A DNA stretch of 64,000 nucleotides. Source: Macrostomum lignano (taxonomy: Eukaryota). Numbering within the stretch: position 1 is the first letter of the stretch; every line of letters starts with the position of its first letter. The DNA is taken from the NCBI GenBank assembly GCA_002269645.1, contig NIVC01000337.1:682001-746000 (forward strand). The letters run 5' to 3'. Under the pieces are notes generated by a model that was given only the letters and a program-made list of their open reading frames with translations, did no database searches and was not told the origin of the DNA. Positions 1,136 through 48,514 of this stretch are shown in pieces. Position numbers and translations under genes: made by a program.

Positions 1136-6016
<4,881 letters not shown>

Positions 6017-6984
6017 GTTGGGCGCTCAGGTGGGCTCGAGTCCCGGACCTAGGGGTGGCTGAGGCGGAACTAACAACAATTTCTGTTTTTCTTTACACAC
6101 ACCTACGAATAGCAAGGAACCGCTGGCACCAAACCAATTGTGATCTGTTTTTTTGCCTGTCTCTCACTGGCTCGCACGCTGCTCCTTCCTATCTTACCGT
6201 ATGCTAACTATTGGATTTATATTCCTATAAAAACAAACTCGAATGCTCGTCACTGCCTACTTAACTGGTGAGTAGCATCCCGTCAAGAAAATGTTTTTCT
6301 ATGTTTTAGTACGTAAAGACGTAAAGATAGAAGCTTTCCTGAATTGGTTGATTAGCTGAATTACTCTTAAATGAAATTATTTGCGATAGCTTATTAATAT
6401 TTTATGAGCAGTACGGTAAGCATATGTAATGTTAGGAAAAATCAGTCTGAAGTTTTTGCGCGTTATTCTATCGGTTGGCGCTTTATTCAGAGGAGCCAAT
6501 AGTTAATTAATACGTAATTTGTGTTTAGATGAAGCCAGCTTTAGTTTAGAATTTCTTTCTCTATCAATTCAATGCTGCGTCTCTTCTAGAAGAAAAACTT
6601 CAAGCTGTTTCCTGTTATGGCTATTTAATTAATTCACTATTTCTGCTAACTTGACAACTGCGTTAACTAATTGCTACATGTGAACGAAAATTTTAGCAAG
6701 TATATGTATGCTCGTATAGTAAAAAATGTTTTTTCTACGTGTATGAGCTTGTTCAAAAATTTTGAAGCCTTACAGACTGTGTGATTTATACCTAGCAGGG
6801 AGATCTTAATGGGATCATGGCAGCTCAATAATAATGGTTCCTAGTACAGAAAGAATTAAAATTCGCACAGCCTACTTATGTTGTGAACATTCTCAGTAGT
6901 ACAGAAATAGAATTTATGAAAATTCTCAAATTTCTACATTATTAGATTGATATGCTTGATTGAGCATTCCCTGTACATTCTGTC

Positions 6985-8155
6985 AACCGGAACCGGACAG
7001 TACCATATAAGAACCGGACGGTACCATATAACAACCGAACTGTATCAGATAAGAACCGGACAGTACCATATAAGAACCGGACAGTACCATATAAGAACCG
7101 GATGGTACCATATAAGAACCGGACAGTATCAGATAAGAAACGGACAGTACCATATAAGAACCGGACGGTACCAATTATCAACCGAACAGTATCAGATAAG
7201 GACCAGACAGTACCATATAAGAACCGGACGGTACCAATTAACAACCGGACAGTACCATATAAGAACCGGACAGTATCATATAAGAACCGGACGGTACCAT
7301 ATAAGAACCGGACAGTATCAGATAAGAACCGGACAGTACCATATAAGAACCGGACGGTACCATATAAGAACCGGACGGTACCAATTAACAACCGAACAGT
7401 ATCAGATAAGAACCGGACAGTACCATATAAGAACCGGACGGTACCAATTAACAACCGAACAGTATCAGATATGAACCGGACAGTACCATATAAGAACCGG
7501 ACGGTACCAATTAACAACCGAACAGTATCAGATAAGAACCGGACAGTACCATATAAGAACCGGACAGTATCAGATAATAACCGGACAGTATCAGATAAGA
7601 ACCGGACAGTACCAATTAAGAACCGGACAGTATCAAATAATAACCGGACAGTACCATATAAGAACCGGACAGTACCATATAAGAACCGGACGGTACCAAT
7701 TAACAACCGAACAGTATCAGATATGAACCGGACAGTACCATATAAGAACCGGACGGTACCAATTAACAACCGAACAGTATCAGATAAGAACCGGACAGTA
7801 CCATATAAGAACCGGACAGTATCAGATAATAACCGGACAGTATCAGATAAGAACCGGACGGTACCAATTAAGAACCGGACAGTATCAAATAATAACCGGA
7901 CAGTACCATATAAGAACCGGACAGTACCATATAAGAACCGGACGGTACCATATAAGAACCGGACAGTATCAGATAAGAATTGGACATTACCATATAAGAA
8001 CCGGACAGTACCGTATAAGAACAGGACAGTACCAGGCAAGAACCGGACAGTATCAGATAATAACCGGACAGTATCAGATAATAACCGGACAGTACCATAT
8101 AAGAACCGGACAGTATCAGATAATAACCGGACAGTACCAGGCAAGAACCGGACGG
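6985..8155. repeat. 21-bp minisatellite (aagaaccggacagtaccatat), intergenic
   Basis: Tandem copies, including a duplicated block of about 12 units; explains ORFs 6942..8240 and 7102..8259. Confidence 0.95.
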
Positions 8156-8825
8156 GACACTGTTTTAGCCTACGGTATGGGCTGATAGATACTTGTTTTA
8201 TTATAGTTAATAACTGGCTTTTTATATCTATAAAGTACATGTACTTTACGATGGCTTAGAGAATATCGCGCACAAGGGCTTCCAGTTATTGTTAGAAGGC
8301 ATGGCTTGGATGCTATTTGCTTCTTCTGGCTTGAAAATCATTCATGGCTGCTTCCATTTTTCAGCTGACCCGCATTTTATTAATGTTTCATTAATAAGAT
8401 ATTGTGTTTGTATTGCAGTCCCAGTTGGAAGCTGGCTTGGCTGAGGGCTTGTGCTGGCACTTTAAATTCTCGAAGTATGAAGAACTGGTTATTAATGCCA
8501 ATGAATGCCTGTTCAAAGGCCTTTTAAACTGTAGCGCTTCAACTTGCTGAAGAGATGCCAGAGAGCGATAAAAATACAATAGGCAGAGCTACTGGGGGAG
8601 GTTGGAGATGAAACTGTTGAGTCCAAGTGATACGAAGTTTAATTTATTCACGCGAACAAGTGCAGATTTTGTTGAAAGAGAGAGCTGGCTGCCAAAGGCC
8701 AAACAGTATACTGTAAATGAAAATTCTTCAAAGAAACCGCGTTTTATTAAAGAGTCGCTCAAAGGCATTTTAACTACATTGAGTTAGGCCACCGCCTACA
8801 ATTGATAAGCCACAAAAGAGACGAA

Positions 8826-13238: not shown

Positions 13239-16200
13239 ATGTTTATGTTTAAGCTGGCTCTTTTCTCCCTTGTGGCATGCGTTGCATTTGCCGATGAAGC
13301 TATCACGGAAGAGGAAGGCGTTCTTGTTCTGACTGAAAAGAACTTTGATTCTGCACTGCAAGCGAACAAGTATATCTTGGTCGAGTTTTGTAAGTTCTGC
13401 CCATGACTGAATGCATTTCATTACTTTTTTTGAAGTTTCTTCATACAATGGTCAGTCAATACATATAATTTTTTTCAATAGCTAGCTAGGCGCTAGGCTT
13501 AGTGATATGAGTAAAAATTGTCTCATAGTTATAAGACTAAGGCCTAATCCGAATATTGTATAATATGCAATGCAATGCATAAAAAACTATAATGTATTGA
13601 TCATACTCTAATAATAATAATACTTTAATGGAAAAATTAACAAACTTTAACTTTTGCATATTTAATTGTATTCTTGATTGACTTTAGTCCTAAATTTCTG
13701 ACAATCTTTTATTAAAGGCAGATTCAATCAAATAGATAAATTGATGAATTTCAATGGATAGATTGACTGACTAAGATTGTCAATTGTCAACTAATTAAAC
13801 TGGTGAATGGATAGTCTAATAGATAAACAAAAATGAACAATGAATTAATATAGTAATATGCAAGTAGGTGGCTAGCAATATATTTTGACTTTGGTTTATT
13901 AAGCTCATTAAGTTTTGTAACTGCTTGTGACTGTGTTATGAGTCTACTATATCCCATTGTCCAAATCATGTTGATTGTATGCCCAAACAAAAATTGAATA
14001 GTTACAAATGCATGCCAAAAAAAATTTAGTGCACACCTATTCTTAAAAATGTGCCGATGTTGCGACAATAAATGACCTTTTCTCAATTACATAATAGACC
14101 CTTAATTAGCAAATAATTTAGTTGATTTTTAAGTTTTTTGGCAATATATTTTAAAGCAAAAAATTAATACAGGCAAATATTTCTTTACATGCTTCTTACA
14201 AGCTTGAAAAAATCAGAAAAATTAAAATTTATGCTTACAAATTAACTTTCATTTTTTCTATTTCATAATAACTCTTATGTGTGATTCTATAAAGTGCATG
14301 CCAGGTGTGCATGGCACTGCATGCATAGTATTTTCTTAGGAGTGATGTACCCTAACTGTGCATACCTAATTTTAATTAAAGATTATGCCAATAATTCATT
14401 TTAAACATCATTTTGCATTCACTCAAACAAACCATAAACTTTCAAGAAATTAAATTTCCTAAAGTAAATGATTGCCAATAATTTTATAAGCATTGCTTTT
14501 AGTTTTAGTATAAAAAATAGGGCTTCCCAAGTTAGAATTTTCCATATACTTATAAACATTTTAATTATCTCATCTAGGCAGCTTGAATATGATATTACTA
14601 TTTATTTAAAAAAATTAATTAGCTATATATATTGATTTCTTTTTTAGATGCCCCATGGTGTGGTCATTGCAAGGCTCTGGCTCCAGAGTATGCCAAGGCT
14701 GCTCAACAGCTAAAGGAAAAGAACTCTGAGATCAAGCTGGCCAAGGTTGATGCCACTGTTGAGGGCAAACTGGCTGAGAAGTATGGTGTGCAAGGCTACC
14801 CAACTATCAAGTTTTTCAAGGAGCAGACTCCCATTGAATACAGTGGCGGCCGCACTGCTGACACCATCATTTCCTGGCTAGAGAAGAAGCTTGGCCCACC
14901 TACCCAGCGCCTGGACTCTGTGGATGCTGCCCAGAAGTTCATCAATGACAAGGAAATTACTGTGATTGGATTCTTCAAGGACACCACCTCAGACAGTGCT
15001 AAGAGCTATGAGGATGCCGCCTTCTCCAAGCTGGAGGACATCCCCTGCGGTATGGCTGACAGCGCCGATATCATGGCCGAATTCAAGGTCGACCAGGACA
15101 CTGTCATGCTGTTCAAGAAGACCGACGGCGCCAGGATCCCCTATACTGGACCCTTCACTGCTGATGAGGTCGCCAAGTTTGTCAAGAACAACAAGCTGCC
15201 CCTGATCAACGAGTTCACCCAGGAGACCGCTGGCGACATCTTTGGCGGCGATGTTAAGAAGCACCTGCTCGTGTTCCTGAAGAAATCGGACGAGGCCCAG
15301 TTCTCCAACATCATGGACCAGTTGAAGGCTCCCGCTGAGCAGTTCAAGGGTGAGTCAAGTTTGCTTTTGAGGTCTCCACAACTGATCAGTGAACTGGTTG
15401 TCTCTCAAATCAATCCTTTCTAACCCACCTACGTTTCCACTGATTTTTTATCCAGACCAAATATTTGGTCAACTATGTCCCAGTATGCCAATCAAATTGC
15501 ATTGATCTGCTGCCAATTTGTTGGCTTTGGGGAAGAAGAGAGGTAAAGTGATATAATTAAAGGTTGAGGTTGCTATTATCTCTCCTGTCTTCCATTTATA
15601 TGCTTTGTAACTATTGAGTATTTCCTTGTCAGATGTTGAGAGGAACCCCATATTCCTGTTTCACAAACTATTTTTTCAATTGTCTTGTCGTTGTTGTTCC
15701 TTAGTAACAACACTGGGCTAACACACTGTGGCTCTATTGTAAACTGTAATGGCTTCACTGATCTTACTAGAGATGGTTACTCAGTCAATGTTGCATTGTT
15801 TCTCATATAAAAACCAACCGCTTCCTCCGCAGGCAAGGCTCTGTTCATCTACGTCGACATCGGTGTCGAGGATAACGAGCGCATTCTGGAGTTCTTCGGC
15901 CTGAAGAAAGAGGATTGCCCGGCCGTCCGATTCATCGCCCTGGACGAGGACATGGTCAAGTACAAGCCGGAGTTTACCGACATCACCGCCGACAACTTGG
16001 CCCAGTTTGTGCAGAGCGTATTGGACGGCAAGCTGAAGCCGCACCTCATGTCCCAGGAAGTGCCGGCCGACTGGGACAAGGAGCCCGTCAAGGTGCTGGT
16101 TGGCAAGAACTTCAACGAGGTTGCCCGCGACAAGACTAAGAACGTGCTGGTTGAGTTCTACGCTCCCTGGTGCGGCCACTGCAAGCAGCTGGCCCCGATC

Positions 16201-16547
16201 TGGGACAAGCTGGGCGAGGAGTACAAGAACCACGAGAACATCGTCATCGCCAAGATGGACTCCACGGCCAACGAGGTCGAGGACGTCAAGGTGCAGTCCT
16301 TCCCCACCATCAAGTTCTTCCCAGCCAACTCCGATGAGATCATCGACTACGAGGGCGACCGCACTCTGGAGGGCTTCAAGAAGTTCCTGGAGTCCGGCGG
16401 CAAGCAGGTCAAGGATGCGGTAAGTGTGCCCACTCGTCTGTTATTTTGCTTTGTCTTATTTAGAGTCCTACTTCCAGTTTCTTAATCAAGCCATCGTTAC
16501 TTCAGGGTGCCGAGTCCCAGGACGACAAGAAGAAGGAGGAGCTGTAG
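13239..16547 (+). CDS. P4HB: Protein disulfide isomerase (PDIA1/P4HB), 493 aa; exons 13239-13389, 14648-15349, 15833-16419, 16506-16547
   Basis: Signal peptide [18 protein letters not shown], two WCGHC active sites (YAPWCGHCK), a-b-b'-a' layout and C-terminal KEEL ER-retention signal. GT-AG junctions have consistent phases (1,1,0). Confidence 0.97.
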
Positions 16548-18300
16548 AATGGGTTCAACATTCACCTATGGCTCTGGAGCCCGGCATGACTTTTAAACTA
16601 TAAAGTTATTTCATATTTGATTGACAATTTTGTTCGTCTTTGTTCTTGTTCTACTTGTTTGTCTGTGTTTGTGTGCGCTGTTGCCTCCCCCCTTGATTGT
16701 TTCGCTTGCTTTTGCATGGTTTAACTGTTATTTGGAAATACAGAGCCCGTTTATAATACTACGGCTTGCTAGTTTGAATTATTCGCATGTTGCTAAATTG
16801 GTTCTATTGTAGCATTAGAAGAGTTAATTTAAACCAGTTATTAGCCCGCCTCCCAGCCCCCGATTTCTGAAATAATTCAGCGCAAACCGAAACACGAAGC
16901 ATTCTGACCTTGTATTTTGCTATTGTTCTTGGATTCTAGCCATAATTGATATTCTGGCTGTGTGCGCTGCCTCGGTCCAGCTGTTCAGCACCTCCAGCTC
17001 TCCTTATGTGCACCGAATTAAGCGTTAACCGAATACCAACTGTCCCGTTTCTGCGTCATTATAATTCATATTTCGAATCGGGCCATCCAAGCCCCAACTG
17101 AGCTAAACAGTAATCTGGACTGGCTTGAAAAGTTGACAACTAATGGAACGGCAGTTCTCCGAATTCCGCTTTGCTTTTGTCTTGCCGAATCAGTGGGGAG
17201 GGGGCTCTCCTGGTGTCGGATTCTCACGCACCGCTCTAATCACCTGACATGCAGCTTGGGGTGTCTGATTGTGTGTTTTATCTGGCCCCCAGTGAGTTCT
17301 GCGCTTCCAGTACTGCTCTACCGTGGGTCCTCCCAACAATTGGCTCTTTCGCATTGCTTCATTGCAAATTTATACTAATTTACTATACATCAGTTTCAAG
17401 CTAATCAATATATAAACCTGTCGCAGTTCCGGTGTGTTTAATTAATTTTTTTTCGGTGTCAATTCCGCAGACCAGCAGTTTGAATTAGTGCGCAATGTTC
17501 GCCTACTTTTTATTTCACCGGCCTGTTATCTGAGTGCTATTGTTATATTCTATAGCTTTCCATTATAGCTAGATTTATTGAATTAGTGGCGCCATCGAAT
17601 TCTTTGTGGTTCAGCCTAATGCAGAGTGTATAAGCTAGAGACCTGTTGTGTTATATACTCGCAAAAATTCGTTATAATTTTCTGTCCTTGTTACTTTTAG
17701 TAGAATAATAAAAAACCTGCACTGTAAAAATTGTGCGTGCCAACGAGGCCCAAAACTAGAAATGCGTGTGGACTGAGCGCTGTTTTTGTTGAAATAAAAC
17801 TAGCTATTAAGAAACGTTTGCTTTCGGATGTGGTGTTTCTCTCCAGCTTCTGGTTTCGGAAATGCAGTAATTAAACTTTTTAAGGCTGAGAATCGAATAG
17901 TTTGATGCACTTTATTTGTTTAGAATAAAATTCTTGTCATTGTCTGTTTGTCCCAGTCAATGTAAGCTAAGCTCTGTTTTAATGGTCTAAACACCTGTGG
18001 ACTAATGAAAATAAATCGGTCATTATGTTGCCGGCTAAAACATTGGGCTAAGTAGTCTGCGTTTCTTGTGTTGTTTCTTGTAATAAAAGACATTACTCTA
18101 TTCTAAACTACTAACTACATGCCAAGTCAATAGTATGAAGCGAGTAAAGTCATTTTATTTTGAATTGTAATAAAAACGCTTCGAAAAATATGCACGCAGG
18201 CTACGTGAGTATTGGTTTTGTGCTCGATGTCGGTGCATGCATGCAGTAATAAATATTCACGGTGGCTAAATGATGAATAGTTCCGCTTGCCACTCAGATG

Positions 18301-19140
18301 TCATTCCGCTGGCACGGCGCAGCCGACGCTCACCGTCTCAACGTCATCGCGCAGCTGACCGCCCGGCATGAGCCGCAGCACCGTGATCGGCAGCATCACG
18401 GGCACCTGGCCGGGGCAGTAGCAGCGGGCCACCGGCCGAATCATCGGGCGCAGCTGCTTATTCACGCGAACGCTGTAGGACGGCGCCGCGGTCCTCGGCG
18501 ACACAGAGGGCGAGCAGACGGCCGGGCGGAACAGCTCGGCACCGGATAGGGAGCGTCTAGCGTCGCGGAGGTCCTTGCCAGTCAGCACAATGTCTCTGTT
18601 GGCGTCGGCGGCAAGCGACTCCAGGACGGCCGCGCAGCCGACCTGCTGCAGCTGGACGGTCTCCACGAAGCGTGGCCTGCCCGACGAGTCACCGTCGATG
18701 GGCAGCGGCTGCAGCTCCGTGACCGGCAGCTTCACTGTGACACAGGAGGCGCCGCCGCTGTTAGTCTTGACTCCCCGCTGTCCTGAGCAGGCGCAGGTGG
18801 AGCGCTGCACCCGGTGGATTGGAATCCCCGCGGCATCGCGTCGATTCCCTGCTGCTGGCGGACCGTCGGTTGCCAGGAATTTAGTGGGGCACAGGTGGTC
18901 GAACAGGAACTGCGGCTCCTCTGCCGGGGAGCCTGAGTGACAGTTGATGCTGCTGCTCACGTTGAGAATCTGGCGGGCTTCGCGCGCTGTGGTTGGCAGA
19001 CGCTTCGGTGGCGGATGATGGCCAGGCTGCGGCACTGGGTAGCCGTGAATTTGAGGCCGCACTTGCTGAGCAGCCGCCAGCAGCAGCAGCAGCAGCAGCA
19101 TGAGAGGCGGAGAAGTCAATGCTCTCGAAACTTTAGTCAT
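18301..19140 (-). CDS. Secreted 279-aa protein with two tandem IL-17-like cystine-knot domains
   Basis: ATG at 19140 and a hydrophobic signal peptide (MLLLLLLLAAAQQ). Two repeats of the pattern C-P/S...CxC...V...VL/EL...VGC (LCPTKF...TCAC...VTEL...QVGC and VCSP...RCYC...VPVMLPITVLR...VSVGC). GC3-rich codons; minus-strand AATAAA at 18154-18159. Confidence 0.7.
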   Translation of the reverse strand: MTKVSRALTSPPLMLLLLLLLAAAQQVRPQIHGYPVPQPGHHPPPKRLPTTAREARQILNVSSSINCHSGSPAEEPQFLFDHLCPTKFLATDGPPAAGNRRDAAGIPIHRVQRSTCACSGQRGVKTNSGGASCVTVKLPVTELQPLPIDGDSSGRPRFVETVQLQQVGCAAVLESLAADANRDIVLTGKDLRDARRSLSGAELFRPAVCSPSVSPRTAAPSYSVRVNKQLRPMIRPVARCYCPGQVPVMLPITVLRLMPGGQLRDDVETVSVGCAVPAE

Positions 19141-19560
19141 GCTTGCTATCTGGAAACTGTAATTCTGGTCACTTTTTACGGGGGTTACTCTCGTAGCATA
19201 GCGCCTCGTATTTTATACACGCAAACGCGGGTCTGACCAATGTGTTTTGTGACGCTGCAGTGTACATTCATGTAAACAGGGGTGACTAATTTATGCCACA
19301 CGTGCATAATGGGGTGGCTGACATGTGCATTGGAATTTGACTGCTGACGATTACTAAGCAGCCGGCTTAACGCTAAAGGGATGTCATGCAACACACTTGG
19401 TTCCCGATTACAATGTACTTCACCGATTAGTCATCATCATCAGCTTCGTCACAGATAAAATCTGCTGCTGTCACTAACCTAAATACTGGATGACTACGCG
19501 TAAAAGAACAACTAAACTTACTTTCCATTGCGGTATGTCTTTCAAAATCGGGGATAGAGA

Positions 19561-20210
19561 TTGGCAATCCATTTTATTTCAATTCATTTGTATTGGCTAG
19601 ATTAGCAATCCATTCTATTCCTTCATTTTCGTTGGCTAGATTAGCAATCCATTCTATTCCAATTCATTTGCATTGGCTAGATTAGCAATCCATTCTATTC
19701 CTTCATTTGTATTGGCTAGATTAGCAATCCATTCTATTCCAATTCATTTGCATTGGCTAGATTAGCAATCCATTCTATTTCTTCATTTGTATTGGCTAGA
19801 TTAGCAATCCATTGTATTCCTTCATTTTCCTTGGCTAGATTAGCAATCCATTCTATTCTAATTCATTTGTATTGGCTATAGATTAGCAATCCATTGTATT
19901 CCTTCATTTTCGTTGGCTAGATTAGCAATCCATTCTATTCCTTCATTTTCGTTGGCTAGATTAGCAATCCATTCTATTCCTTCATTTTCGTTGGCTAGAT
20001 TAGCAATCCATTGTATTCCTTCATTTTCGTTGGCTAGATTAGCAATCCATTCTATTCCTTCATTTTCGTTGGCTAGATTAGCAATCCATTGTATTCCTTC
20101 ATTTTCGTTGGCTAGATTAGCAATCCATTGTATTCCTTCATTTTCGTTGGCTAGATTAGCAATCCATTCTATTCCTTCATTTTCGTTGGCTAGATTAGCA
20201 ATCCATTCAC
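19561..20210. repeat. 39-bp minisatellite (ttggctagattagcaatccattctattccttcattttcg)
   Basis: Tandem copies; explains ORF 19913..20383. Confidence 0.95.
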
Positions 20211-21789: not shown

Positions 21790-23745
21790 GACACATCACG
21801 GACACATCAGAGACACGGACACATGACAGACACGGGGGTTGAGACACAGACACATGACAGACACGTGGGTACAGACACAGTCACCGACAGACACGGGGGT
21901 AGAGACAGAGACACTGACAGACACGGGGGTAGAGACACAGACACTGACAGACACGGGGGTAGAGACACAGACAACTGACAGACACGGGGGTAGAGACACA
22001 GACACTGACAGACACGTGGGTACAGACACAGACACTGACAGACACGGGGGTAGAGACAGAGACACTGACAGACACGGGGGTAGAGACACAGACACTGACA
22101 GACACGGGGGTAGAGACACAGACAACTGACAGACACGGGGGTAGAGACACAGACAACTGACAGACACGGGGGTTGAGACACAGACAGATGACAGACACGC
22201 GGGTAGAGACACAGACACTGACAGACACGCGGGTAGAGACACAGAAAACTGACAGACACGTGGGTACAGACACAGACACATGACAGACACGTGGGTACAG
22301 ACACAGACACATGACAGACACGGGGGTAGAGACACAGACAACTGACAGACACGGGGGTAGAGACACAGAAAACTGACAGACACGCGGGTAGAGACACAGA
22401 CACTGACAGACACGGGGATAGAGACACAGACAACTGACAGACACGGGGGTAGAGACACAGAAAACTGACAGACACGGGGGTAGAGACACAGACACTGACA
22501 GACACGGGGGTAGAGACACAGACAACTGACAGACACGGGGGTAGAGACACAGACAACTGACAGACACGGGGGTTGAGACACAGACAGATGACAGACACGC
22601 GGGTAGAGACACAGACACTGACAGACACGCGGGTAGAGACACAGAAAACTGACAGACACGTGGGTACAGACACAGACACATGACAGACACGTGGGTACAG
22701 ACACAGACACATGACAGACACGGGGGTAGAGACACAGACAACTGACAGACACGGGGGTAGAGACACAGAAAACTGACAGACACGCGGGTAGAGACACAGA
22801 CACTGACAGACACGGGGATAGAGACACAGACAACTGACAGACACGGGGGTAGAGACACAGAAAACTGACAGACACGGGGGTAGAGACACAGACACTGACA
22901 GACACGCGGGTAGAGACACAGAAAACTGACAGACACGGGGGTAGAGACACAGACACTGACAGACACGGGGATAGAGACACAGACACTGACAGACACGTGG
23001 GTACAGACACAGACACATGACAGACACGAGGGTTGAGACACAGACACATGACAGACACGTGGGTACAGACACAGACACATGACAGACACGTGGGTACAGA
23101 CACAGACACATGACAGACACGGGGGTAGAGACACAGACAACTGACAGACACGGGGGTAGAGACACAGAAAACTGACAGACACGGGGGTAGAGACACAGAC
23201 AACTGACGTACACGCGGGTAGAGACACAGACACTGACAGACACGGGGATAGAGACACAGACACTGACAGACACGCGGGTAGAGACACAGAAAACTGACAG
23301 ACACGGGGGTAGAGACACAGACACTGACAGACACGGGGATAGAGACACAGACACTGACAGACACGTGGGTTGAGACACAGACACTGACAGACACGGGGGT
23401 TGAGACACAGACAGATGACAGACACGTGGGAACAGACACAGACACATGACAGACACGGGGGTTGAGACACAGACACATGACAGACACGTGGGTAAAGACA
23501 GACACATGACAGACACGTGGGTAAAGACACAGACACATGACAGACACGTGGGTAAAGACAGACACATGACAGACACGTGGGTAAAGACACAGACACATGA
23601 CAGACACGGGGGTTGAGACACAGACACATGACAGATACGTGGGTACAGACACAGACACTGACAGACACGGAGGAACAGACACAAACAGAAGGCAGAGACA
23701 CAGGGGTGCGGACACAGGGGTGCGGACACAGGCAGACTGACACAG
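21790..23745. repeat. 30/31-bp minisatellite (gacagacacgggggtagagacacagacact) with a 400-bp higher-order duplication
   Basis: Tandem copies; sequence at 22161-22480 recurs at an offset of exactly 400. Explains the three 630-640 aa ORFs. Confidence 0.95.
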
Positions 23746-24355
23746 AGGGTTCAGATTGATGGCTGGAGAGAGACACGGAAGGTCAAGCGAGGACAGATCC
23801 CCTGGCGCAGTCCTTTCTCAGCCGCGCATTCAGATCAGCGCTGGAACTTTATGGCTGGGGGGGGGGGCGACGTCCTCGTCTTTAAAGGTCCAAGGAAGTA
23901 GGCAGCGGGAGGTCTCTTGGAGGTGGGTTGCCCCTTTTGGCTGAAAATAGGCCGTATTTAATATTGCATGAGCTTCGGCTCCGTCCGCTGCTTCTCTGCA
24001 GTATCGGCCGGGATAAAAAAGTTGCGGAATCAGACTGCCCTGCCTTGGGCTCACGTGAACAGTTGGGGACGATCGGCGGCTGCGCTTTACGGCTGGCGAG
24101 CCCCGTTTATTGAATATTCATACTCTGAGCCATGAGATGGGGCTCGCAGCTGCCGCGTATCGCGGTGAAAAGTGTTAAGCGGGTGTGTTTTGTATAAACA
24201 GCGATACATCATCTGACCAGCTGACCAAATTTCCCATGTCACAGATGCCTGACCTGACAAGGGAGCTGCGGACTCTGGGGTCGCGACCTTAGCGGATTGT
24301 GCTTTGTTTTGGGCTTCTGTTGTGACTGCGATCGGGGTGCAGTCGATCAAGAAAG

Positions 24356-35065: not shown

Positions 35066-36172
35066 CTAGTGCTTCAACGTGTGCCACTTGGTCACCTGCT
35101 GGCGCGGCTTGTTCAGCATCTCAGTCCAGTGCTTCGACTCCTCTGTGGAAGACCGGGTGCCCAGCCGGATCCGGCCGATGGTGTCGGAGCCGATGAAGTC
35201 CTTGTCCTTGACCACCATCTCGATGTGGTACTCGTGGATCTTCTCGGCGCTGACGCTGAACGCGAAGGTTTCATTCCACTGCGGGTTGAGGTTCTTGTAG
35301 ATGATGCTGCCCTTCTTTTTCTCGCACTCTTTGTTGCTTTTGTTGTGCACCAGCTTGATGACGCAATAGGGATCGGAGGTCCGTCCGAGGTCCATGGCTT
35401 TGAGGTCCCTGGCCTTGAGGGCGGCAATTTCCAGCTGGGTGGTCTGCGGATTGTAGCACAGACCCACCATGACGTCACCGACATAGCCGCGGGTCTTCTT
35501 GTTGGGCTGCAGCTGGCGCCACAGGGTGAATGAGCGCTTCTTCTGGTCCTCGTCGTAGAGGAACACCAGCGGGAACAGCACGTCCCCGATCGCGTCGTCC
35601 CGGCTGAATCGGTCGTAGTCGTACACCTGGATGAAGAGCGTCCGGTCCAGCAGCCGCTCGCCGGGAAATTCCTCGAATACAAACACCTCGTTCCATTTCG
35701 GGTTGAGCTTGCGCATTTTGATCTTGGTCCGCACCTTGTTGCCCTTGTCTGGCAGGATGCTGATCTTGCAGTACGGATCCGAGGTGCCCATCGGGAAGTC
35801 CATGGCCGGCAGCTGCTGCGCCTGACAGATCTTGATGGTCAAGTGCCGGCTGGTCCATTCGTAGCTAACGCTGAAGTTGATCCTGCCGAGGTTCTGGTCC
35901 GGGCCCTCGTCGTAGACTTCGTCCTGCTGGCCGCCTCCGTCGCGCTCGGAGCTTTCGGAGCCGCCCGTGGCGCCGATGATGCCGCTTTTGGCCACGAAGC
36001 TGGAGAACAGGCTCGTCTCCTGCTGCTCCTGCTGCTGCTGCTGCTGATGGCGGAAATGGTTGCGGCTGCCTATAGGGCCGTTGCCATGACGACCGGGAGA
36101 AGCCGTGCTGTCCCGCCCGCGACGCCGCCGCCGCGGTCGATGGGCCGCCGCCGGCCGAGCTGCTCTCGCCAG
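35066..36172 (-). CDS. SYT7: Synaptotagmin-7-like tandem C2 (C2A-C2B) protein; N-terminus unresolved
   Basis: C2A LGRINFSVSY...AMDFPMGTSDPYCK...YDYDRFSRDDAIG and C2B LCYNP...KAMDLGRTSDPY...KDKD...HWTEMLNKPRQQVTKWHTLKH closely follow Syt7. The frame is open from 36172 to the stop at 35066, but there is no in-frame ATG before C2A. A candidate ATG at 36221 is in another frame. Confidence 0.85.
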   Translation of the reverse strand: MARAARPAAAHRPRRRRRGRDSTASPGRHGNGPIGSRNHFRHQQQQQQEQQETSLFSSFVAKSGIIGATGGSESSERDGGGQQDEVYDEGPDQNLGRINFSVSYEWTSRHLTIKICQAQQLPAMDFPMGTSDPYCKISILPDKGNKVRTKIKMRKLNPKWNEVFVFEEFPGERLLDRTLFIQVYDYDRFSRDDAIGDVLFPLVFLYDEDQKKRSFTLWRQLQPNKKTRGYVGDVMVGLCYNPQTTQLEIAALKARDLKAMDLGRTSDPYCVIKLVHNKSNKECEKKKGSIIYKNLNPQWNETFAFSVSAEKIHEYHIEMVVKDKDFIGSDTIGRIRLGTRSSTEESKHWTEMLNKPRQQVTKWHTLKH

Positions 36173-41735: not shown

Positions 41736-42812
41736 TCACAAGATGGCGCAGGCGGTCGCTGACTCGGCCGACGGAGGAGGCGGCGGCGGCGGCTCCGGCC
41801 GCCTCTCCCAGTGCAGGCGGCGGTCGCAGCCATAGACAAACAGGCGGCGGCCGCAGCTGAACTCGCAGGCGCAGACGGGCACGAGGCGGACGGTGAGCCG
41901 CTGCAGCAGCAGCCGGCAGTTCGAGTCGCCAGCCTCGGTGGCCAAGTGCCGGTTGGTCAGGACCTCAGCGGCCAGAACCAGGCCCAGGGGGAACCGGGAC
42001 TCGCTCAGGGCGACCCGCGGCCCCACCTGACGATGCACCGGCCGGCCGTTCGCCTCGGCCAGCAGCCCGGCCGGCAGCCCGGCCGCCGTCAGCAACGCGC
42101 TGTCGATGGTCACCGACCAGGTCGCCTGCAGCCAGCGGCTCGGCACTAGCTGGCCGGCGCCGGCGCAGCGGCCGCACTCGACGCCGGACACTCGGCCTCC
42201 GCAGGCCGGACACCGGACGCTGCCCCTGCCAGCGCAGACGAAGCAGCGGTGAGAGTCGCCGCCGCCTCCGCCGCCTCCGCCGCCGCCGTGGCAGCCGGGG
42301 CAGGTCACGTGACCTTTGCGCCTGCACCGGCGGCAGTTCGAGTAGCCGACGCCGTGGCAGCTCGGACAGGCGGCCGGCCGGCCGACCCGGCCAGGCAGCG
42401 GGACGGCCGCCTCCGCCTCGGTGAAGGCCGCCGGGATCGGCCGCTTCGCCTCCCAGCTGCTGGCCGGCACCGGGTCATCCTGAAGGCAGCGCCGCAGCAG
42501 CTGCTGCCTCGCCGATCGCCGGTCGCCAACCAGTCGGCAGTCGTCCTCGCCGTGGAGCTCCTCCTCCGGGCAGGGAAGCAGGCGGTCCTGCAGGCTGTGC
42601 CGCTCGTACCAGCTGGCCAGGGTGCACACGAAGGCCTCGCCGTGGACCAGCCGAACGCCAGACGGCGCGGCGGCTTCGTCCTGGTTGCCGTCGGGACGGC
42701 GACAGCAGCAGCGGTGCAGGAGGCGGCGAAATCTCTGGCGCCGAGCCAGCAGCTCGAGGGCGTCCGCTTCGGTCAGCCGCCAGCCGGAGTGATTCTCTGA
42801 GTCTGCTGTCAT
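41736..42812 (-). CDS. SSUH2: SSUH2-like protein with CxxCxGxG zinc-binding repeats and a C-terminal CaaX (CAIL); 5' end uncertain
   Basis: CPSCHGVG, CRRCRRKG, CPGCHGGG, CFVCAGRG, CPACGG and CGRCAGAG repeats, followed by LLLQRLTVRLVPV...LFVYG and terminal CAIL, as in the SSUH2 family. First ATG at 42812; acceptor (tttcag) just upstream, exon starting at 42868. The upstream part of ORF 41736..43418 is repeat-derived. Confidence 0.75.
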   Translation of the reverse strand: MTADSENHSGWRLTEADALELLARRQRFRRLLHRCCCRRPDGNQDEAAAPSGVRLVHGEAFVCTLASWYERHSLQDRLLPCPEEELHGEDDCRLVGDRRSARQQLLRRCLQDDPVPASSWEAKRPIPAAFTEAEAAVPLPGRVGRPAACPSCHGVGYSNCRRCRRKGHVTCPGCHGGGGGGGGGGDSHRCFVCAGRGSVRCPACGGRVSGVECGRCAGAGQLVPSRWLQATWSVTIDSALLTAAGLPAGLLAEANGRPVHRQVGPRVALSESRFPLGLVLAAEVLTNRHLATEAGDSNCRLLLQRLTVRLVPVCACEFSCGRRLFVYGCDRRLHWERRPEPPPPPPPSAESATACAIL

Positions 42813-42974
42813 GATGGCAGGGCCGAAAGTGCAGCCGTTGGGGTCGACAGGGGCTCCGCAGTCTGGCGCTGAAATAGGGGAGCTCAGCCAGTCCGCCGGA
42901 GCCAATGGGAGGCCGCAGATTCCCCCTCCATCACCCAACCGGCTGCTGCCGTGGTGAAGCTGGCCAAGGCGAAC

Positions 42975-43340
42975 CGGAGCCACCATTGTCATACAGCTGT
43001 AGGCTGACTTCAGAGCCACCATTGTCAGACAGCTGTAGGCTGACTTCAGAGCCACCATTGTCAGACAGACATTGTAGGCTGACTTCAGAGCCACCATTGT
43101 CAGACAGACATTGTAGGCTGACTTCAGAGCCACCATTGTCAGACAGCTGTAGGCTGACTTCAGAGCCACCATTGTCAGACAGACATTGTAGGCTGACTTC
43201 AGAGCCACCATTGTCAGACAGACATTGTAGGCTGACTTCAGAGCCACCATTGTCAGACAGACATTGTAGGCTGACTTCAGAGCCACCATTGTCAGACAGA
43301 CATTGCAGGCTGACTTCAGAGCCACCATTGTCGGACAGCT
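42975..43340. repeat. 36/39-bp minisatellite (ttcagagccaccattgtcagacagacattgtaggctgac)
   Basis: Tandem copies upstream of the SSUH2-like exon. Confidence 0.93.
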
Positions 43341-44749
43341 TTTACAGCCAGCCCACAGTTGTGGAAATTGTGGTTTGCGGACGAGAGTTGAACTTTGGAG
43401 GCCTCTGGCTCTGAGCAACCTGGGGAGTCGAAAGCCGGTTTAAAGGTAAACACAGCACACACGGGCGTCACGGATTTTGCTTTACTTATAATGAAACTTC
43501 GAATTCAAGAGCGTGCAGCTCGATCTCTGTCAGCCTGGTAGATAAACAAAGTTTTTAAAAAAATTGATTGAACTCTTGATAGAGCGGTCATCCAGGACAC
43601 GGGATCTGTTTACCGAAGAACTTCAGATTGGAGGGGCTGGCAGAGGGAAAGTGGGAGGAAACGGGGGGGGGCTGGCTGCGGGGATGGAATAAAATAACTT
43701 GGGAGAAAAGGAGAACTCTGCATAGAGAGGAAAAGCGAAATGAGGACGCAGAATATGCGCAGGTGGCTAAAGTGCATGAGGGCTGCGGGCATCCTGGCGC
43801 AACGTCTCCGGTGACATTGTCCCACAACCAGAGCTGACAGAAATGCTGCCCATTCCGCCGACTCCTGAGCAACCGCGCTAATAATACTGCTGATACTGCT
43901 ACTCATGCACACGCTCACACAGGACCGAGTGCTGTGTGCTGAAGGTCCAGAAGCTCCGACAGAGCCAGAGCCGATGCAGACAGATGTGGTCGACGTGCTG
44001 ATGTAATTTTGGAGGCTTGGCAAGGCTGCACTGAGGCGCTGTGCTGATCGGCTCAAGGGTTGTATTGAGTTGTGTTTATGAGACAAATCTGACTCCCTGG
44101 CAACAATTAGCGACTTTATTCTCGTTGAGAAGGTGCGTAACGAAACGTTTACCAGTCTTCGTGAATTTCGTGTGCCTGTGTTTCTCCCTTGGGGGAAGTT
44201 CTACCGCTAGAAAGCAGTGAAAAAATTATACGATATCACACCATATTTTCGTTTTCATCTCGCAGACATAAGTCCAGAATACAGACTTAACATTAAGGCT
44301 TGTAAGTTGAGAACTGAGCACAAATCGTGTTCATAACAAGTCCCAGTTTAGATGCAAATCAATCGAATCTGATCAAGTCCTTAGAGACGGGCCTCGACAT
44401 CTTTCCGGCCAAGTAGATTATCATGACTATCATTCTTATTCGACGTGCCTTAATTCCGTTTCCGTGACAGGAAAGCCATTTTGTGCTGCAATTACTCGCA
44501 CAGAGGCCCATTATTCACGGGTATGGCAATATACTACTTATAAGATTGGGCTTTCAGATCCAGTTGGCAGAGGCAGAACATGGAAGATAATTTATAATAC
44601 ACACCATCATGTAGCCCGACCTGTATACTGATAAACTGGCCGTCACTGATGTACTTTTAAGATTTTAACCGACATGCTTAAGGTTATCAGACAAATTTTA
44701 GGATTTAAAACAATTAGGCAAAGTGAATTAGTGAAACGAAGCGAGTCGC

Positions 44750-46150: not shown

Positions 46151-47791
46151 TCAAGCCGGCCGGCCGCTGCCAGCCAGCCTGGCCGCCGCCCAGTCGGCCG
46201 CAATCAGCAGGCAGCTGGCCGCGTGCAGGCAGAAGCCAATGGCAGCCCAGAAGCGCAGCGTGTCGCCGGCCCCCAGCAGCAGGAAGCCCATGCAGGTGTA
46301 GTCGAACACGCGCATCTTGAAGAACCAGCGCGCCAAGTAGGCCACCGACTGGTTCAGCCTGGCCCGACGGAGCAGCCGGTCCAGCGCGTCCTCGGCGTAG
46401 CGGGCCAGCGGGATGGTCAGGAAGGACAGGAAGTAGCCGCCGTGGACGCCGTGCCAGTAGGCGGAGACGGCCATGGTGACGGGCAGGCGGAGCGCCCGGC
46501 CGGGCACCCGGCGGTAGACGAAGGCGGCGAGCCAGTGCTGCACAGAGCGGTTCCAGGCCTTCATGCCAGCCTGCACGGTGGGCGCGAACTCGCAGCCGGC
46601 CTCGTCGATGTTGTGCACCGACTCGTAGCTGATGTCGTCGCTTTTGTTCAAGTCGCCGGCTCCGTCAATGGCTGGACGAGACTGCCGCTGCTGCCGCTGC
46701 TCTTCCAGGACTTCAAGACGCGTTGGGCCCTTGGTGGCGACGTGCGTGAAAAGATTGCTGGGTCACTGAGTGCAACCTGCTGCCACCGCGGTCAGTAAGC
46801 AGACACTCCGGCACTGCTCAGCAGACACCCTGTCTACCATCAAGCAGACACCCTGCCTACCATAATGAGACACCCTGCCTACCATAAGGAGACACCCTGC
46901 CTACCATAAGGAGACACCCTGTCTACCATCAAGAAGACACCCTGTCCACCATCAAGCAGACACCCTGTCTACCATCAAGCAGACACCCTGTCCACCATCA
47001 AGCAGACACCCTGTCTACCATCAAGCAGACACCCTGTCTACCATCAAGCAGACACCCTGTCTACCATCAAGCAGACACCCTACCTACTATCAAGCAGACA
47101 CCCTACCTACTATCAAGCAGACACCCTGCCTGCCATCAAGCAGACACCCTACCTACTATCAAGCAGACACTCTGCCTACTATCAAGCAGACACCCTACCT
47201 ACTATCAAGCAGACACCCTGCCTATTATCAGGCAGACACCCTACCTACAGAAAACAGAGAATACCCCAACCAGCCAGTCATTCGATCAAATACTATCACC
47301 GATATGTATAGAAAAAGCAAGAGGTCTCGCTCACCTCTCCGCAGCGCGGTTCGGACGCGGCCGGATAGCCGCCCAGGCCGACGGCCATGCAGACGCACTC
47401 GGACACAACCCAGGCGAAGTACATCCGGCAGCGGAAGGTGGTGAACATGGCGAACATGAAGTAGATCCTGTAGGCCCAGCTGGAATCAACCAGCAGGTCG
47501 TCAGTCCTGGCGTAGTCAATGAAGTACCACTGCGACAAGATCAGGTAGGCTACGCCGTACAGCGGCGCGTAGGCAAGGCGCTTCCACAGGGCAGCGCCGA
47601 CGGCGGGCGGGGGCGGCGCACCGGGCGCCTGGAGCCGGTCAACCAGGTCCCGGTAGATGCTGAACCGGTAGTAGGGCCCGGTGAGCACGCCCGGGTATGC
47701 GTAGGCGTAGAGCATAATCTGGGTGGGGCAACGGGCTCGGCGATATAAGCTGGCAGGGAGTGCGTCAAACAGCAGGGCGCCAAATCCAAGC

Positions 47792-47877
<86 letters not shown>

Positions 47878-48514
47878 GGGCGCTAAATCGAGAGACAGTA
47901 GGGCTCAAATTAGGAAAAAAATTTCAGTTCCTTGAAAGTCCGGTTGGACTCCAGAAAAAAGGCGAGTTCAGTCAGTTCCCAAGGATCGAATCCCAAAGAT
48001 TTCGAGTCTGTCCAACCTGCCAGAACTTCGGCGACACCCCGGTGTAGCGCAGCTGCAGCTCCAGACTCCGCCGTTCGCCATCGTCCGTCGAGTCTCGCAG
48101 CCGCCGTTCCAACCGGCGGGTGTCGACAATTTCGAAGGCCACGCCGACCATTCGCAGCGTCATGAGCAGCTGGACAGCGTTGCTATGCGGCGAGGGCTTG
48201 GTGAATCCCAGCAGATGGCAAGTGCGGAAGAAGGCCAGGTAGCCGAAGCACCAGGCGGCGCAGAGGGCGTGGACTCGATTCCTGGGCCCGAACGAGCAGA
48301 TGGAAGCGGAGACCAGAGCGACCAGCACCGAGTGCCACATGAAGGAGCTGCAGACGGCGGCGCAGAGCAGGAAGCCGAAGGCGGACACCAGCTGCACAGC
48401 GGCTGAGGCTGGGAGGAAAGGCAGCGCTGAGCGGAGGTGGCCGCGGGCGAACACCGGCCCGACTGCCAGAGAGATAAGCAGCAGGCTGGCGTAGACCCAG
48501 TCGTCTGGTGTCAT
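46151..48514 (-). CDS. MBOAT7: Lysophospholipid acyltransferase 7 (MBOAT7), 486 aa; exons 48514-48017, 47718-47335, 46729-46151
   Basis: MTPDDWVY N-terminus, NAVQLLMTLRMVGVAFE, YAYAYPGVLTGPYYR, GEGPT, WNRSVQHWL, SAYWHGVHGGYFLSFLTIP (catalytic His) and WFFKMRVFDY. All three exons join in phase 0. Confidence 0.93.
46820..47250. repeat. 23-bp minisatellite (accatcaagcagacaccctgtct) in MBOAT7 intron 2
   Basis: Direct reading. Confidence 0.93.
47795..47873. repeat. (GA)n microsatellite in MBOAT7 intron 1
   Basis: Direct reading. Confidence 0.97.

What the first reader, a model, noticed from the sequence alone, without database searches (positions are those of the whole stretch)
18301..19140. Secreted protein with two tandem IL-17-like cystine-knot domains
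Seen: signal peptide, Pro-rich linker, then two modules each with an early Cys, a CxC, a beta-strand (VTEL / ITVLR) and a terminal VGC. Established: IL-17 domains show CPW...CxCxGC...VPI...VLR...VGCTC and normally occur once per chain, acting as dimers. Inference: a single-chain pseudo-dimer. Both modules lack the last Cys of VGCxC, so the disulfide pattern is non-canonical. It is a candidate novel invertebrate cytokine or neuromodulator; the related Trunk/PTTH-type cystine knots are an alternative.
Basis: partly seen in the sequence, partly recalled or inferred. Interest (0 to 1): 0.75.

Follow-up and report, generated by a model that had tools for sequence, protein, structure and literature searches.

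The report
Secreted protein with two IL-17-like modules
An intronless gene in an unidentified invertebrate-type animal genome appears to encode a secreted protein carrying two very divergent copies of the interleukin-17 cystine-knot module in one chain, an arrangement not confirmed for this cytokine family, though it rests on sequence statistics only.

Summary
An 840-nt ORF lies on the minus strand (18301..19140, 279 aa). It has a signal peptide, a Pro-rich stretch ending in KR, and two modules that each carry CxCxGQ, a beta-strand motif and VGCA. It looks like a real single-exon gene: the GC island matches the ORF exactly, and a TATAAAA box, an AATAAA signal and frame-specific codon bias are present.

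No homologue was found in any large database, and Pfam IL17 is the only family hit, below threshold (12-15 bits against 24). With an IL-17 profile I built from 53 published domains, each module beat all 20,000 composition shuffles. hhalign gave 94.8%. A profile of the two modules ranked 23 true IL-17s first and gave NGF, Spaetzle and PTTH about 0 bits. The scores are far below true members (45 bits or more), and NGF cross-hits the forward profile equally. Structure prediction was poor.

The "non-canonical" cysteine pattern is the published T1C type: the Cys3-Cys6 pair is lost on both sides. Module 2 also lacks Cys4.

Verdict: probably a divergent tandem IL-17-superfamily ligand. The pseudo-dimer idea is untested, and an RDARR site in the linker allows cleavage into two chains instead.

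The parts
19211..19217 (-). TATAAAA box, 71-77 nt upstream of the ATG. It is the putative core promoter.
   Evidence: Read directly on the minus strand. Inferred function only.
18301..19140 (-). Single-exon ORF of 279 codons plus TGA. A is at -3 of the ATG.
   Evidence: GC is 0.63-0.72 inside against 0.31-0.48 in the flanks. The codon log-likelihood is +11.6 in frame against -100 to -304 in the other five frames. GC1/2/3 are 0.68/0.53/0.77.
19069..19140 (-). Signal peptide, res 1-24 (MTKVSRALTSPPLMLLLLLLLAAA).
   Evidence: Sequence features: a basic n-region, a Leu-rich core and an AAA motif. It is the only region AlphaFold modelled as a helix with pLDDT above 70. The cleavage site is inferred.
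19000..19068 (-). Pro-rich pro-segment, res 25-47, ending in the dibasic K46-R47 (19000..19005).
   Evidence: The layout of signal, pro-peptide, KR and mature part is the one described for CFSH precursors (PMC8398477 text). Cleavage is inferred.
18625..18942 (-). Module 1, res 67-172, an IL-17-like knot of T1C type. By alignment, C84 is Cys1 (CPT for CPW), C116 is Cys2, Q121 replaces Cys3, C133 is Cys4, C169 is Cys5 and A171 replaces Cys6. C67 and C118 are extra.
   Evidence: The custom IL-17 HMM gives 16.2 bits, and 0 of 20,000 shuffles reach it. The best single match is Caenorhabditis F25D1.3 at 14.6 bits, above all 10,653 decoys. AF2 predicts a long hairpin at res 132-145 and 158-172 with pLDDT 62-68.
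18517..18624 (-). Inter-module linker, res 173-208, with R192-D-A-R195-R196 (18553..18567). This is a minimal furin (RxxR) or dibasic convertase motif.
   Evidence: There is no internal Met, signal-like stretch or stop, so it is not two fused genes. Cleavage is inferred.
18304..18516 (-). Module 2, res 209-279, a shortened IL-17-like module. C209 is Cys1 (CSP), LRPMIRPVARC240 resembles the RxPxxIxEA[RK]C motif, C240 is Cys2, C242 is extra and Q245 replaces Cys3. The Cys3-Cys4 loop and Cys4 are deleted. VPVMLPITVLRL resembles VPIxxxILVLRR. C274 is Cys5 and V276 replaces Cys6.
   Evidence: Pfam IL17 covers res 246-274 against profile positions 45-77 of 81, E=0.03 and 15.1 bits on the module alone. 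The custom HMM gives 14.3 bits, and 0 of 20,000 shuffles reach it.
18154..18159 (-). AATAAA poly(A) signal 142 nt after the stop. A second one lies at 17911..17916.
   Evidence: Inferred function.

Best explanation
This is a real, intronless, TATA-driven gene of an unidentified metazoan, probably an intron-poor invertebrate. It encodes a secreted precursor made of a signal peptide, a Pro-rich pro-segment ending in KR, and two ancient, highly diverged copies of the IL-17-type cystine-knot module joined by a 36-residue linker. In both modules the Cys2-Cys5 disulfide positions are kept (C116-C169 and C240-C274). The Cys3-Cys6 pair has been lost on both sides together (Gln for Cys3, Ala or Val for Cys6), which is the known T1C knot variant. 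Module 1 keeps Cys1-Cys4 (C84-C133). Module 2 has lost Cys4 along with its loop. Inferred mechanism: the protein is an extracellular ligand of the IL-17/CFSH/PTTH kind. IL-17 ligands act as dimers of two knots that bind the double-FN3 ectodomain of a SEFIR (IL-17R-type) receptor. Here both protomers would come from one gene. They could act as a covalent single-chain pseudo-heterodimer, or as two chains after convertase cleavage at R195-R196. What is shown: the ORF, its gene-like signals, the internal repeat, and the statistical relation to IL-17. What is inferred: secretion, disulfide pairing, fold, processing, dimer geometry, receptor and biological role.
For: Gene-likeness:
- The GC island coincides exactly with the ORF, and codon bias is specific to one frame.
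- TATAAAA, A at -3, and AATAAA are present.
- It is the only open frame of six here.

IL-17 relation:
- Pfam IL17 is the only one of 24,736 families reported at E up to 10.
- A profile of 53 IL-17 domains from PMC4517768 gives 19.7 bits for the whole protein (p=5e-8 for one sequence), 16.2 for module 1 and 14.3 for module 2. No shuffle out of 20,000 reached any of the three scores.
- The ORF ranks first of 359 six-frame ORFs of the window (19.6 bits; the next is 8.9).
- hhalign of the two-module alignment against the IL-17 alignment gives a local probability of 94.8% (P=5e-8, 69 columns). The global alignment gives 79.7% and places CPT on CPW.

Specificity:
- The two-module profile ranks 23 IL-17s first. 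Caenorhabditis F25D1.3 and its C. briggsae orthologue score 19.7-19.9, sea urchin 19.7, amphioxus 19.3 and human IL-17D 17.6.
- NGF scores 0.2, PTTH 0.2, Spaetzle -1.4, and VEGF, TGF-beta and hCG-beta 3 or less. The control sequences were checked against PDB.
- The best of 10,653 decoys scores 11.1.

Other support:
- Loss of Cys3 and Cys6 together in both modules is what a real disulfide pair predicts, and it matches the T1C type (PMC11087794).
- AF2 was given only the two modules. It builds a long beta-hairpin, and about 30 of the top 50 Foldseek PDB hits are IL-17A/F chains, all at E>1.
Against: - No homologue was found in 5.8 billion clustered proteins, in 1.84 billion representatives, or in metagenome and viral contigs. 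There is therefore no conservation or dN/dS evidence.
- This absence is weak evidence, because the neighbouring PDI also finds nothing above 58% identity.
- The Pfam score is below the gathering threshold.
- The per-module scores (14-16 bits) are far below leave-one-out IL-17s (45 or more), CFSH (35-37) and even PTTH (23). Human NGF reaches 14.1 bits on the same forward profile. The forward score alone therefore only indicates a neurotrophin/IL-17-type knot.
- The N-terminal halves fit poorly: there is no CPW Trp, the NRxP motif is weak, and each has an insertion of about 9-10 residues.
- Single-module pairwise scores are marginal, and a decoy tops the list for module 2.
- AlphaFold confidence is low (pLDDT 35 and 49).
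- The composition is rich in Pro, Ala, Arg and Gly, as in spurious GC-rich ORFs.
- There are no expression data.
Confidence: 0.6

Rival explanations
1. It is a real secreted cystine-knot ligand, but of a neighbouring family (Trunk, Noggin-like, or a lineage-specific neurotrophin). It would signal through a Torso-type receptor tyrosine kinase or another receptor, not an IL-17R.
For: The IL-17 profile cross-hits NGF at 14.1 bits and Spaetzle at 9.0, the same range as the modules. Trunk is reported as the closest relative of IL-17, and PTTH and CFSH blur the border (PMC11087794). The Pfam IL17 hit is below threshold.
Against: The two-module profile gives about 0 bits to NGF, Spaetzle and PTTH, but 13-20 bits to 14 of 53 IL-17s. 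Pfam NGF, Spaetzle, Noggin, PDGF and TGF-beta models gave no reported hit. The A[RK]CxCxG, VPxxxxITVLR and VSVGC motifs are IL-17 motifs (PMC4517768). Trunk itself was not tested.
Confidence: 0.15
2. It is a real, fast-evolving orphan secreted protein with an internal repeat. Its likeness to IL-17 is convergence of a few short motifs, and it has a different fold.
For: There are no homologues anywhere. AlphaFold confidence is low and gives no knot. The N-terminal halves of the modules do not fit IL-17. Pairwise scores are marginal.
Against: No shuffle out of 20,000 reached the score of either module, independently and in the same register. hhalign gives 94.8%. The Cys3/Cys6 pair is lost in a coordinated way. 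IL-17A/F dominate the Foldseek list although no IL-17 sequence was given to the predictor.
Confidence: 0.13
3. It is not a gene: a chance open frame in a GC-rich island, such as a degenerate repeat or a pseudogene remnant.
For: An open 840-nt frame occurs in 0.7-2.3% of random sequences of this composition. The window is full of repeat-derived long ORFs. The in-frame codon score is only slightly positive (+11.6). It is not on record as a called gene.
Against: The GC island ends exactly at the start and stop codons. A textbook signal peptide sits at the first ATG. TATAAAA and AATAAA lie at the right distances. GC3 exceeds GC1, which exceeds GC2, as in neighbouring conserved exons. The region is not a tandem repeat in TRF. 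The IL-17 signal is found in this frame only.
Confidence: 0.1

Closest known systems
Invertebrate IL-17 of knot type T1C, e.g. C. elegans F25D1.3 (ILC-17.1) and its C. briggsae orthologue
   Same: It has the CxC motif without the following GC cysteine, a Cys4 just before strand 3, and VGC followed by non-Cys residues. It is the best single match to module 1 (14.6 bits) and to the two-module profile (19.7-19.9 bits). It is secreted with an N-terminal signal.
   Different: It has one domain per chain, a clear CPW and REP motif, and scores about 65 bits against an IL-17 profile built without it. The modules here score 14-16. It has no tandem copy and no Pro-rich pro-segment.
Vertebrate IL-17A/F homo- and heterodimers (PDB 4HR9, 1JPY, 5N92)
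   Same: Two knot protomers form the active ligand. The strand 3-4 hairpin motifs are similar (VPI..ILVLRR and VSVGC). They are the top structural neighbours of the weak model.
   Different: They are T2 type: Cys1/Cys4 are replaced by Ser and Cys3/Cys6 are kept, the opposite choice. The two protomers come from separate genes or chains and are linked by interchain disulfides, not a peptide linker.
[quoted passage not shown]
   Same: The layout is signal peptide, pro-peptide, dibasic site and a Cys-rich IL-17-related mature part. CFSH has CPT or CPS in place of CPW, as in module 1. They act as neuroendocrine ligands, and CFSH and PTTH are reported to bind IL-17Rs (PMC11087794).
   Different: They have a single full (T1A) knot. 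CFSH scores 35-37 bits and PTTH 23 bits on the IL-17 profile, but only 0.2-6.6 against the module profile. They are not close relatives.
Sea urchin gene models SPU_019350.1 (3 IL-17 domains) and SPU_022838.1 (2 domains)
   Same: They are the only published multi-IL-17-domain proteins I found (PMC4517768).
   Different: Each unit of these models restarts with a signal-peptide-like stretch. Later re-annotation describes sea urchin IL17 genes as 1-3 exon genes in tandem arrays (PMC5457136). They therefore look like fused neighbouring genes (my reading). Here the two modules lie in one uninterrupted genomic ORF with no internal signal.

Membership tests
IL-17 (Pfam PF06083) | Score at or above the curated gathering threshold of the family model | tested here: not met
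   12 bits for the full protein and 15.1 bits for module 2 alone, against a cut-off of 24. Module 1 alone gave no hit.
IL-17 (Pfam PF06083) | Significant profile similarity to an alignment of accepted IL-17 domains | tested here: met
   The custom 53-sequence HMM gave 19.7, 16.2 and 14.3 bits, and 0 of 20,000 shuffles reached them. hhalign gave 94.8%, P=5e-8. In the reverse direction the module profile ranked IL-17s 1-23. The scores are far below true members, which reach 45 bits or more.
IL-17 (Pfam PF06083) | Cys2-Cys5 knot disulfide positions (EAxC ... VGC) | tested here: met
   C116/C169 and C240/C274 align to these columns. The bond itself is inferred.
IL-17 (Pfam PF06083) | Cys3-Cys6 knot disulfide (xGC ... 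CxC last Cys) | tested here: not met
   Q121 with A171 and Q245 with V276 occupy these positions. Both partners are lost in both modules. This equals the published T1C variant, so it does not exclude membership (PMC11087794).
IL-17 (Pfam PF06083) | Cys1-Cys4 (CPW Cys and the Cys before strand 3), as in non-olfactorean IL-17s | tested here: inconclusive
   In module 1, C84 (CPT) and C133 align (global). Module 2 has C209 (CSP), but Cys4 and its loop are deleted.
IL-17 (Pfam PF06083) | Conserved motifs: NR[IYF]Pxx[IL]xEA[RK]C, VP[IV]xxxILVLR[RK] and V[GA]CTC (PMC4517768) | tested here: inconclusive
   Module 2 has LRPMIRPVARC, VPVMLPITVLRL and VSVGCA, a good shadow of all three. Module 1 has GIPIHRVQRSTC, VTVKLPVTELQ and QVGCA, which is weaker. 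The Trp of CPW is absent in both.
IL-17 (Pfam PF06083) | Cystine-knot fold with two long beta-hairpins | tested here: inconclusive
   AF2 single sequence gave pLDDT 34.7. The two-row alignment gave pLDDT 49 with one long hairpin. Foldseek gave no hit at E<0.001, although about 30 of the top 50 are IL-17A/F.
IL-17 (Pfam PF06083) | Dimeric ligand that binds an IL-17R (FN3-FN3-SEFIR) receptor | not testable with these tools
   No SEFIR or FN3 ORF is among the large ORFs of the window. The rest of the genome is not available.
PTTH / Trunk | Sequence similarity to PTTH or Trunk knots | tested here: not met
   Bombyx PTTH (checked against PDB 5AOQ) scores 0.2 bits against the module profile. Trunk was not tested because no sequence was available to me.
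NGF / Spaetzle neurotrophin knots | Sequence similarity to NGF or Spaetzle C-106, with a terminal CxC | tested here: not met
   NGF scores 0.2 bits and Spaetzle -1.4 bits against the module profile. No Pfam NGF or Spaetzle hit was reported. Both modules lack the terminal CxC.
CFSH (crustacean female sex hormone) | Signal, pro-peptide, dibasic site and mature IL-17-domain hormone, with close similarity to CFSH sequences | tested here: inconclusive
   The layout and the CPT motif agree. Similarity is only 0.4-6.6 bits, and the organism is unknown.

The most novel reading that the evidence does not exclude
This is a natural single-chain IL-17: two non-identical IL-17-type knots fused in one polypeptide that fold onto each other as a built-in asymmetric heterodimer. 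Alternatively it is a polyprotein precursor that a convertase cuts at R195-R196 into two obligate partner chains. Either would be a way of making an IL-17-family ligand that has not been confirmed in any organism. It would fix the 1:1 stoichiometry of two different receptor-binding faces in a single gene.
Probability: 0.3. Interest if true: 0.65.

Novelty: new variant of a known kind. Interest (0 to 1): 0.5.

Why it matters
IL-17 ligands signal as dimers. Which receptor chains are recruited depends on whether the dimer is a homo- or a heterodimer. A gene that hard-wires two different protomers into one chain or one precursor would be a natural experiment in asymmetric IL-17 signalling. It would also be a template for single-chain IL-17 reagents.

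It also shows how far the family can drift. Each module keeps only two disulfides or fewer, fails the Pfam threshold, and is invisible to 1.8-billion-sequence searches. Genome surveys that count IL-17 genes by Pfam hits would miss such members.

If the host is an ecdysozoan, it would add to the recent picture that IL-17-type ligands there act as neuro-endocrine factors (CFSH, PTTH, ILC-17.1).

Tried and rejected
- Large-database homology searches found nothing. These were search for homologous proteins with the full protein and with the two-module alignment, and exhaustive phmmer against 1.84 billion representatives. An exact-product look-up, two metagenome scans and one viral scan also found nothing.
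- PDB sequence searches with the full protein, module 2 and the two-module profile found no IL-17. The only hit was a chance one to a radial spoke protein at E=1.
- tblastn of the protein against the window found no paralogue.
- I spent the third homology search on the neighbouring PDI, hoping for syntenic loci in relatives. The best identity was 58%, so neither the organism nor synteny was obtained. Rfam found nothing that could place the organism.
- AlphaFold on the single sequence was useless (pLDDT 34.7). The two-row alignment was only slightly better.
- I tried to obtain Trunk and PTTH sequence sets from paper supplements. They were images or not held. Only Bombyx PTTH could be used.
- The bacterial promoter/terminator scan is irrelevant for a eukaryotic gene.
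- Rejected: two adjacent genes fused by a sequencing error. The linker has no stop, Met or signal.
- Rejected: a repeat-derived ORF. TRF finds no array between 9476 and 19558.
- Rejected: a gene on the plus strand. It has only 83-121 aa fragments.
Full report
**1. What is there**

The window is eukaryotic. GC-rich exons of conserved animal genes sit in AT-rich DNA that is packed with mini- and microsatellites (82 TRF rows). The conserved genes include a PP2A-type phosphatase, protein disulfide isomerase, a double-C2 synaptotagmin-like protein, an MBOAT and a CSN4/PSMD12-like protein.

At the reported coordinates there is one long ORF, on the minus strand: ATG at 19140, TGA at 18303..18301, 279 aa. 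The opposite strand has only fragments of 83-121 aa.

- A signal peptide (res 1-24).
- A Pro-rich segment ending in K46-R47.
- Module 1, with C67, C84 (LCPT), C116-A-C118-S-G-Q, C133, LPVTEL and VGC169.
- A 36-residue linker.
- Module 2, with C209 (VCSP), C240-Y-C242-P-G-Q, LPITVLRL and VGC274, followed by five more residues and the stop.

The two modules align at 32% identity with all landmark residues in register. Their local alignment score is reached by 7 of 2000 shuffles. This is an old internal duplication, not a recent one.

**2. Is it a gene?**

An open 840-nt frame is not rare at this GC content. It occurs in 0.7-2.3% of random sequences of the same composition, so openness alone proves little. 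Several independent signals coincide, however:
- GC is 0.63-0.72 in every 100-nt bin inside the ORF and 0.31-0.48 immediately outside both ends.
- GC3 (0.77) exceeds GC1 (0.68), which exceeds GC2 (0.53). The conserved exons of the window show the same kind of bias (GC3 0.84).
- A codon model trained on those exons scores the ORF +11.6 in frame and -100 to -304 in the other five frames.
- On the minus strand, TATAAAA lies at 19217..19211, which is 77 nt before the ATG. A is at -3. AATAAA lies at 18159..18154, which is 142 nt after the stop.
- The region is not part of any tandem array.

I take it as a probable single-exon gene (about 0.85). No expression or conservation data could be obtained.

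**3. Database searches**

Nothing related was found in any of the following:
- The 5.8-billion-cluster protein collection, searched with the protein and with the module alignment.
- The 1.84-billion-representative library read exhaustively by phmmer.
- PDB sequences.
- Metagenome or viral contigs.
- The window itself.

The exact product is not on record. This absence is weak evidence. The highly conserved PDI next door finds nothing above 58% identity, so the source lineage is essentially unrepresented.

Pfam reports a single family at E up to 10, which is IL17 (PF06083). It scores 12 bits for the whole protein and 15.1 bits (E=0.03) for module 2 alone. It covers res 246-274 against profile positions 45-77 of 81. 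This is below the 24-bit gathering score.

**4. Testing the IL-17 idea properly**

I took 53 IL-17 domains (nematode, annelid, mollusc, crustacean, echinoderm, tunicate, amphioxus and human) from the S1 dataset of PMC4517768. I aligned them and built an HMM.

*Forward direction.*
- The ORF scores 19.7 bits (p=5e-8 for a single sequence), module 1 scores 16.2 and module 2 scores 14.3.
- The alignments put C116/C118 and C240/C242 on the ClC columns, C133 on the Cys before strand 3, and both VGC motifs on VGC.
- No shuffle out of 20,000 composition-preserving shuffles reached the real score for the mature protein or for either module.
- Among all 359 six-frame ORFs of the window the ORF is first (19.6 bits), and the next scores 8.9.
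- hhalign of the two-module alignment against the IL-17 alignment gives a local probability of 94.8% (P=5e-8, 69 columns). The global alignment gives 79.7% and places LCPT on the CPW motif.

*Calibration.* This tempers the result.
- Leave-one-out, every accepted IL-17 scores 45 bits or more (median 70).
- Crayfish CFSHs score 35-37 bits.
- Bombyx PTTH scores 23 bits.
- Human NGF scores 14.1 bits and Spaetzle C-106 scores 9.0 bits. These control sequences were verified against PDB.
- The forward score therefore places the modules only within the neurotrophin/IL-17 group of knots.

*Reverse direction.* This test discriminates between the families.
- A profile of the two modules ranks 23 IL-17 domains first. 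C. briggsae and C. elegans F25D1.3 score 19.9 and 19.7, a sea urchin IL-17 19.7, an amphioxus IL-17 19.3 and human IL-17D 17.6.
- NGF scores 0.2, PTTH 0.2, Spaetzle -1.4, CFSH 0.4-6.6, and VEGF, TGF-beta and hCG-beta 3.2 or less.
- Among 10,653 shuffled or reversed IL-17 decoys the maximum is 11.1 bits. By contrast, 14 of the 53 real domains reach 13 bits or more.

*Single modules against the same set.*
- For each module, 8 real IL-17s appear in the top 25, where 0.14 are expected by chance.
- Pairwise scores are marginal, and a decoy heads the list for module 2.

**5. Structure**

AlphaFold on the single sequence failed (pLDDT 34.7). Given only module 1 with module 2 as the second alignment row, it reached pLDDT 49. 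It built one long beta-hairpin (res 132-145 and 158-172, pLDDT 62-68), which is where IL-17 strands 3 and 4 would be.

Foldseek against PDB gave no significant match (all E>1). About 30 of the 50 best matches are IL-17A or IL-17F chains, aligned over 40-46 columns at roughly 3-4 A. This is suggestive only. The fold is not demonstrated.

**6. The cysteine pattern**

IL-17 knots have six numbered cysteines paired 1/4, 2/5 and 3/6. Published variants are T1A (all three pairs), T1B (no 2/5), T1C (no 3/6), T2 (no 1/4, in tunicates and vertebrates) and T3 (PMC11087794).

By alignment, module 1 reads as follows:
- Cys1 = C84
- Cys2 = C116
- Cys3 replaced by Q121
- Cys4 = C133
- Cys5 = C169
- Cys6 replaced by A171

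This is exactly T1C, as in C. elegans F25D1.3 (...CLCRKS...FCMPI...VGCHS) and several mollusc and amphioxus sequences in the dataset.

Module 2 has Cys1 = C209, Cys2 = C240, Q245 in place of Cys3, Cys5 = C274 and V276 in place of Cys6. It has also lost Cys4 together with the loop of about 12 residues before strand 3.

The new point is that both partners of the lost pair are gone in both modules, as expected if the alignment reflects a real disulfide. The remaining cysteines (C67 and C118; C209 and C242) could pair by elimination. That is inference.

**7. How it probably works**

The best-supported reading is a secreted ligand of the IL-17 superfamily. This covers IL-17 sensu lato, the group that also holds CFSH and PTTH and that is reported to bind IL-17R-type receptors (PMC11087794). 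IL-17s act as dimers. Here one gene supplies two different protomers.

Two routes are open:
- A covalent single-chain pseudo-heterodimer. The 36-residue linker is long enough for any packing.
- Cleavage by a convertase at R192-D-A-R-R196 into two chains that associate. The N-terminal Pro-rich piece would be removed at K46-R47, as in CFSH precursors.

I cannot choose between these two routes. A single N-glycosylation sequon (N60-V-S) and an even Cys count fit a secreted protein. The TATA box, the small intronless layout and two ATTTA pentamers in the short 3' UTR would suit a tightly regulated, inducible gene. That is a weak hint. Whether the role is immune or neuro-endocrine depends on the unknown host.

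**8. Comparison and novelty**

The only published multi-domain IL-17 proteins I found are two early sea urchin gene models (PMC4517768). Each of their units restarts with a signal-like stretch. Later work describes the sea urchin genes as separate 1-3 exon genes in tandem arrays (PMC5457136). They look like merged models, which is my reading.

Full-text searches for natural tandem or two-domain IL-17 proteins found nothing else.

A two-module IL-17-like protein in one uninterrupted ORF therefore appears to be a new variant of a known kind. It is not a new kind. Its membership in IL-17 proper fails the curated threshold.

**9. Verdict**

- The probability that this is a real gene encoding two IL-17-superfamily modules is about 0.6.
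- The probability that it acts as a built-in heterodimer or a two-chain precursor is about 0.3.
- Interest is moderate (0.5).

Noticed in passing
window 1-64000: The window is very rich in mini- and microsatellites: 82 TRF rows, including (TCTA)n, (TGTC)n, (GATA)n and (CAGA)n arrays of 90-180 copies and many 13-44-bp minisatellites. These create numerous spurious long ORFs, for example 6942-8240 and 21796-23776.
   Followed up: partly
window 14632-16485 (+): A protein disulfide isomerase gene lies tail-to-tail about 1.8 kb from the ORF. It has unusually large exons (at least 790 nt), so the gene is intron-poor. Its best identity to anything in the 5.8-billion-cluster collection is only 58%, so the source lineage is not represented there.
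   Followed up: partly
window 3244-3816 (+), 35066-35995 (-), 46151-46651 and 47972-48571 (-), 52223-52726 (-), 59068-60039 (-): Other conserved exons are a PP2A-type Metallophos phosphatase, a double-C2 (synaptotagmin-like) protein, an MBOAT acyltransferase, a PSMD12/CSN4-like N-terminal domain and a poly-Q C2H2 zinc-finger protein. Conserved exons have GC3 of about 0.84. None is a SEFIR or FN3 receptor.
   Followed up: partly
window 41736-43418 (-): A 560-aa ORF has a Cys-rich CxxCxGxG-type (DnaJ zinc-finger-like) stretch and a poly-Gly run. Part of it overlaps a 39-bp minisatellite, and it has no Pfam hit. Its identity is unresolved.
   Followed up: no
window 62406-62957 (-): A 183-aa ORF has a WIGL..D motif reminiscent of C-type lectin domains, but no Pfam hit at E up to 0.001. 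It is probably a partial exon.
   Followed up: no
window 19558-20208: A 39-bp minisatellite (16 copies) begins about 340 bp upstream of the TATA box of the ORF. Two TGACTAA (AP-1-like) heptamers lie between it and the TATA box, at about 19430 and about 19285. No test of significance was made.
   Followed up: no
method note: A profile built from 53 IL-17 domains gives human NGF 14.1 bits, Spaetzle C-106 9.0 bits and Bombyx PTTH 23 bits. Weak IL-17 profile hits therefore cannot by themselves separate IL-17 from other neurotrophin-type cystine knots. A reciprocal test is needed.
   Followed up: yes
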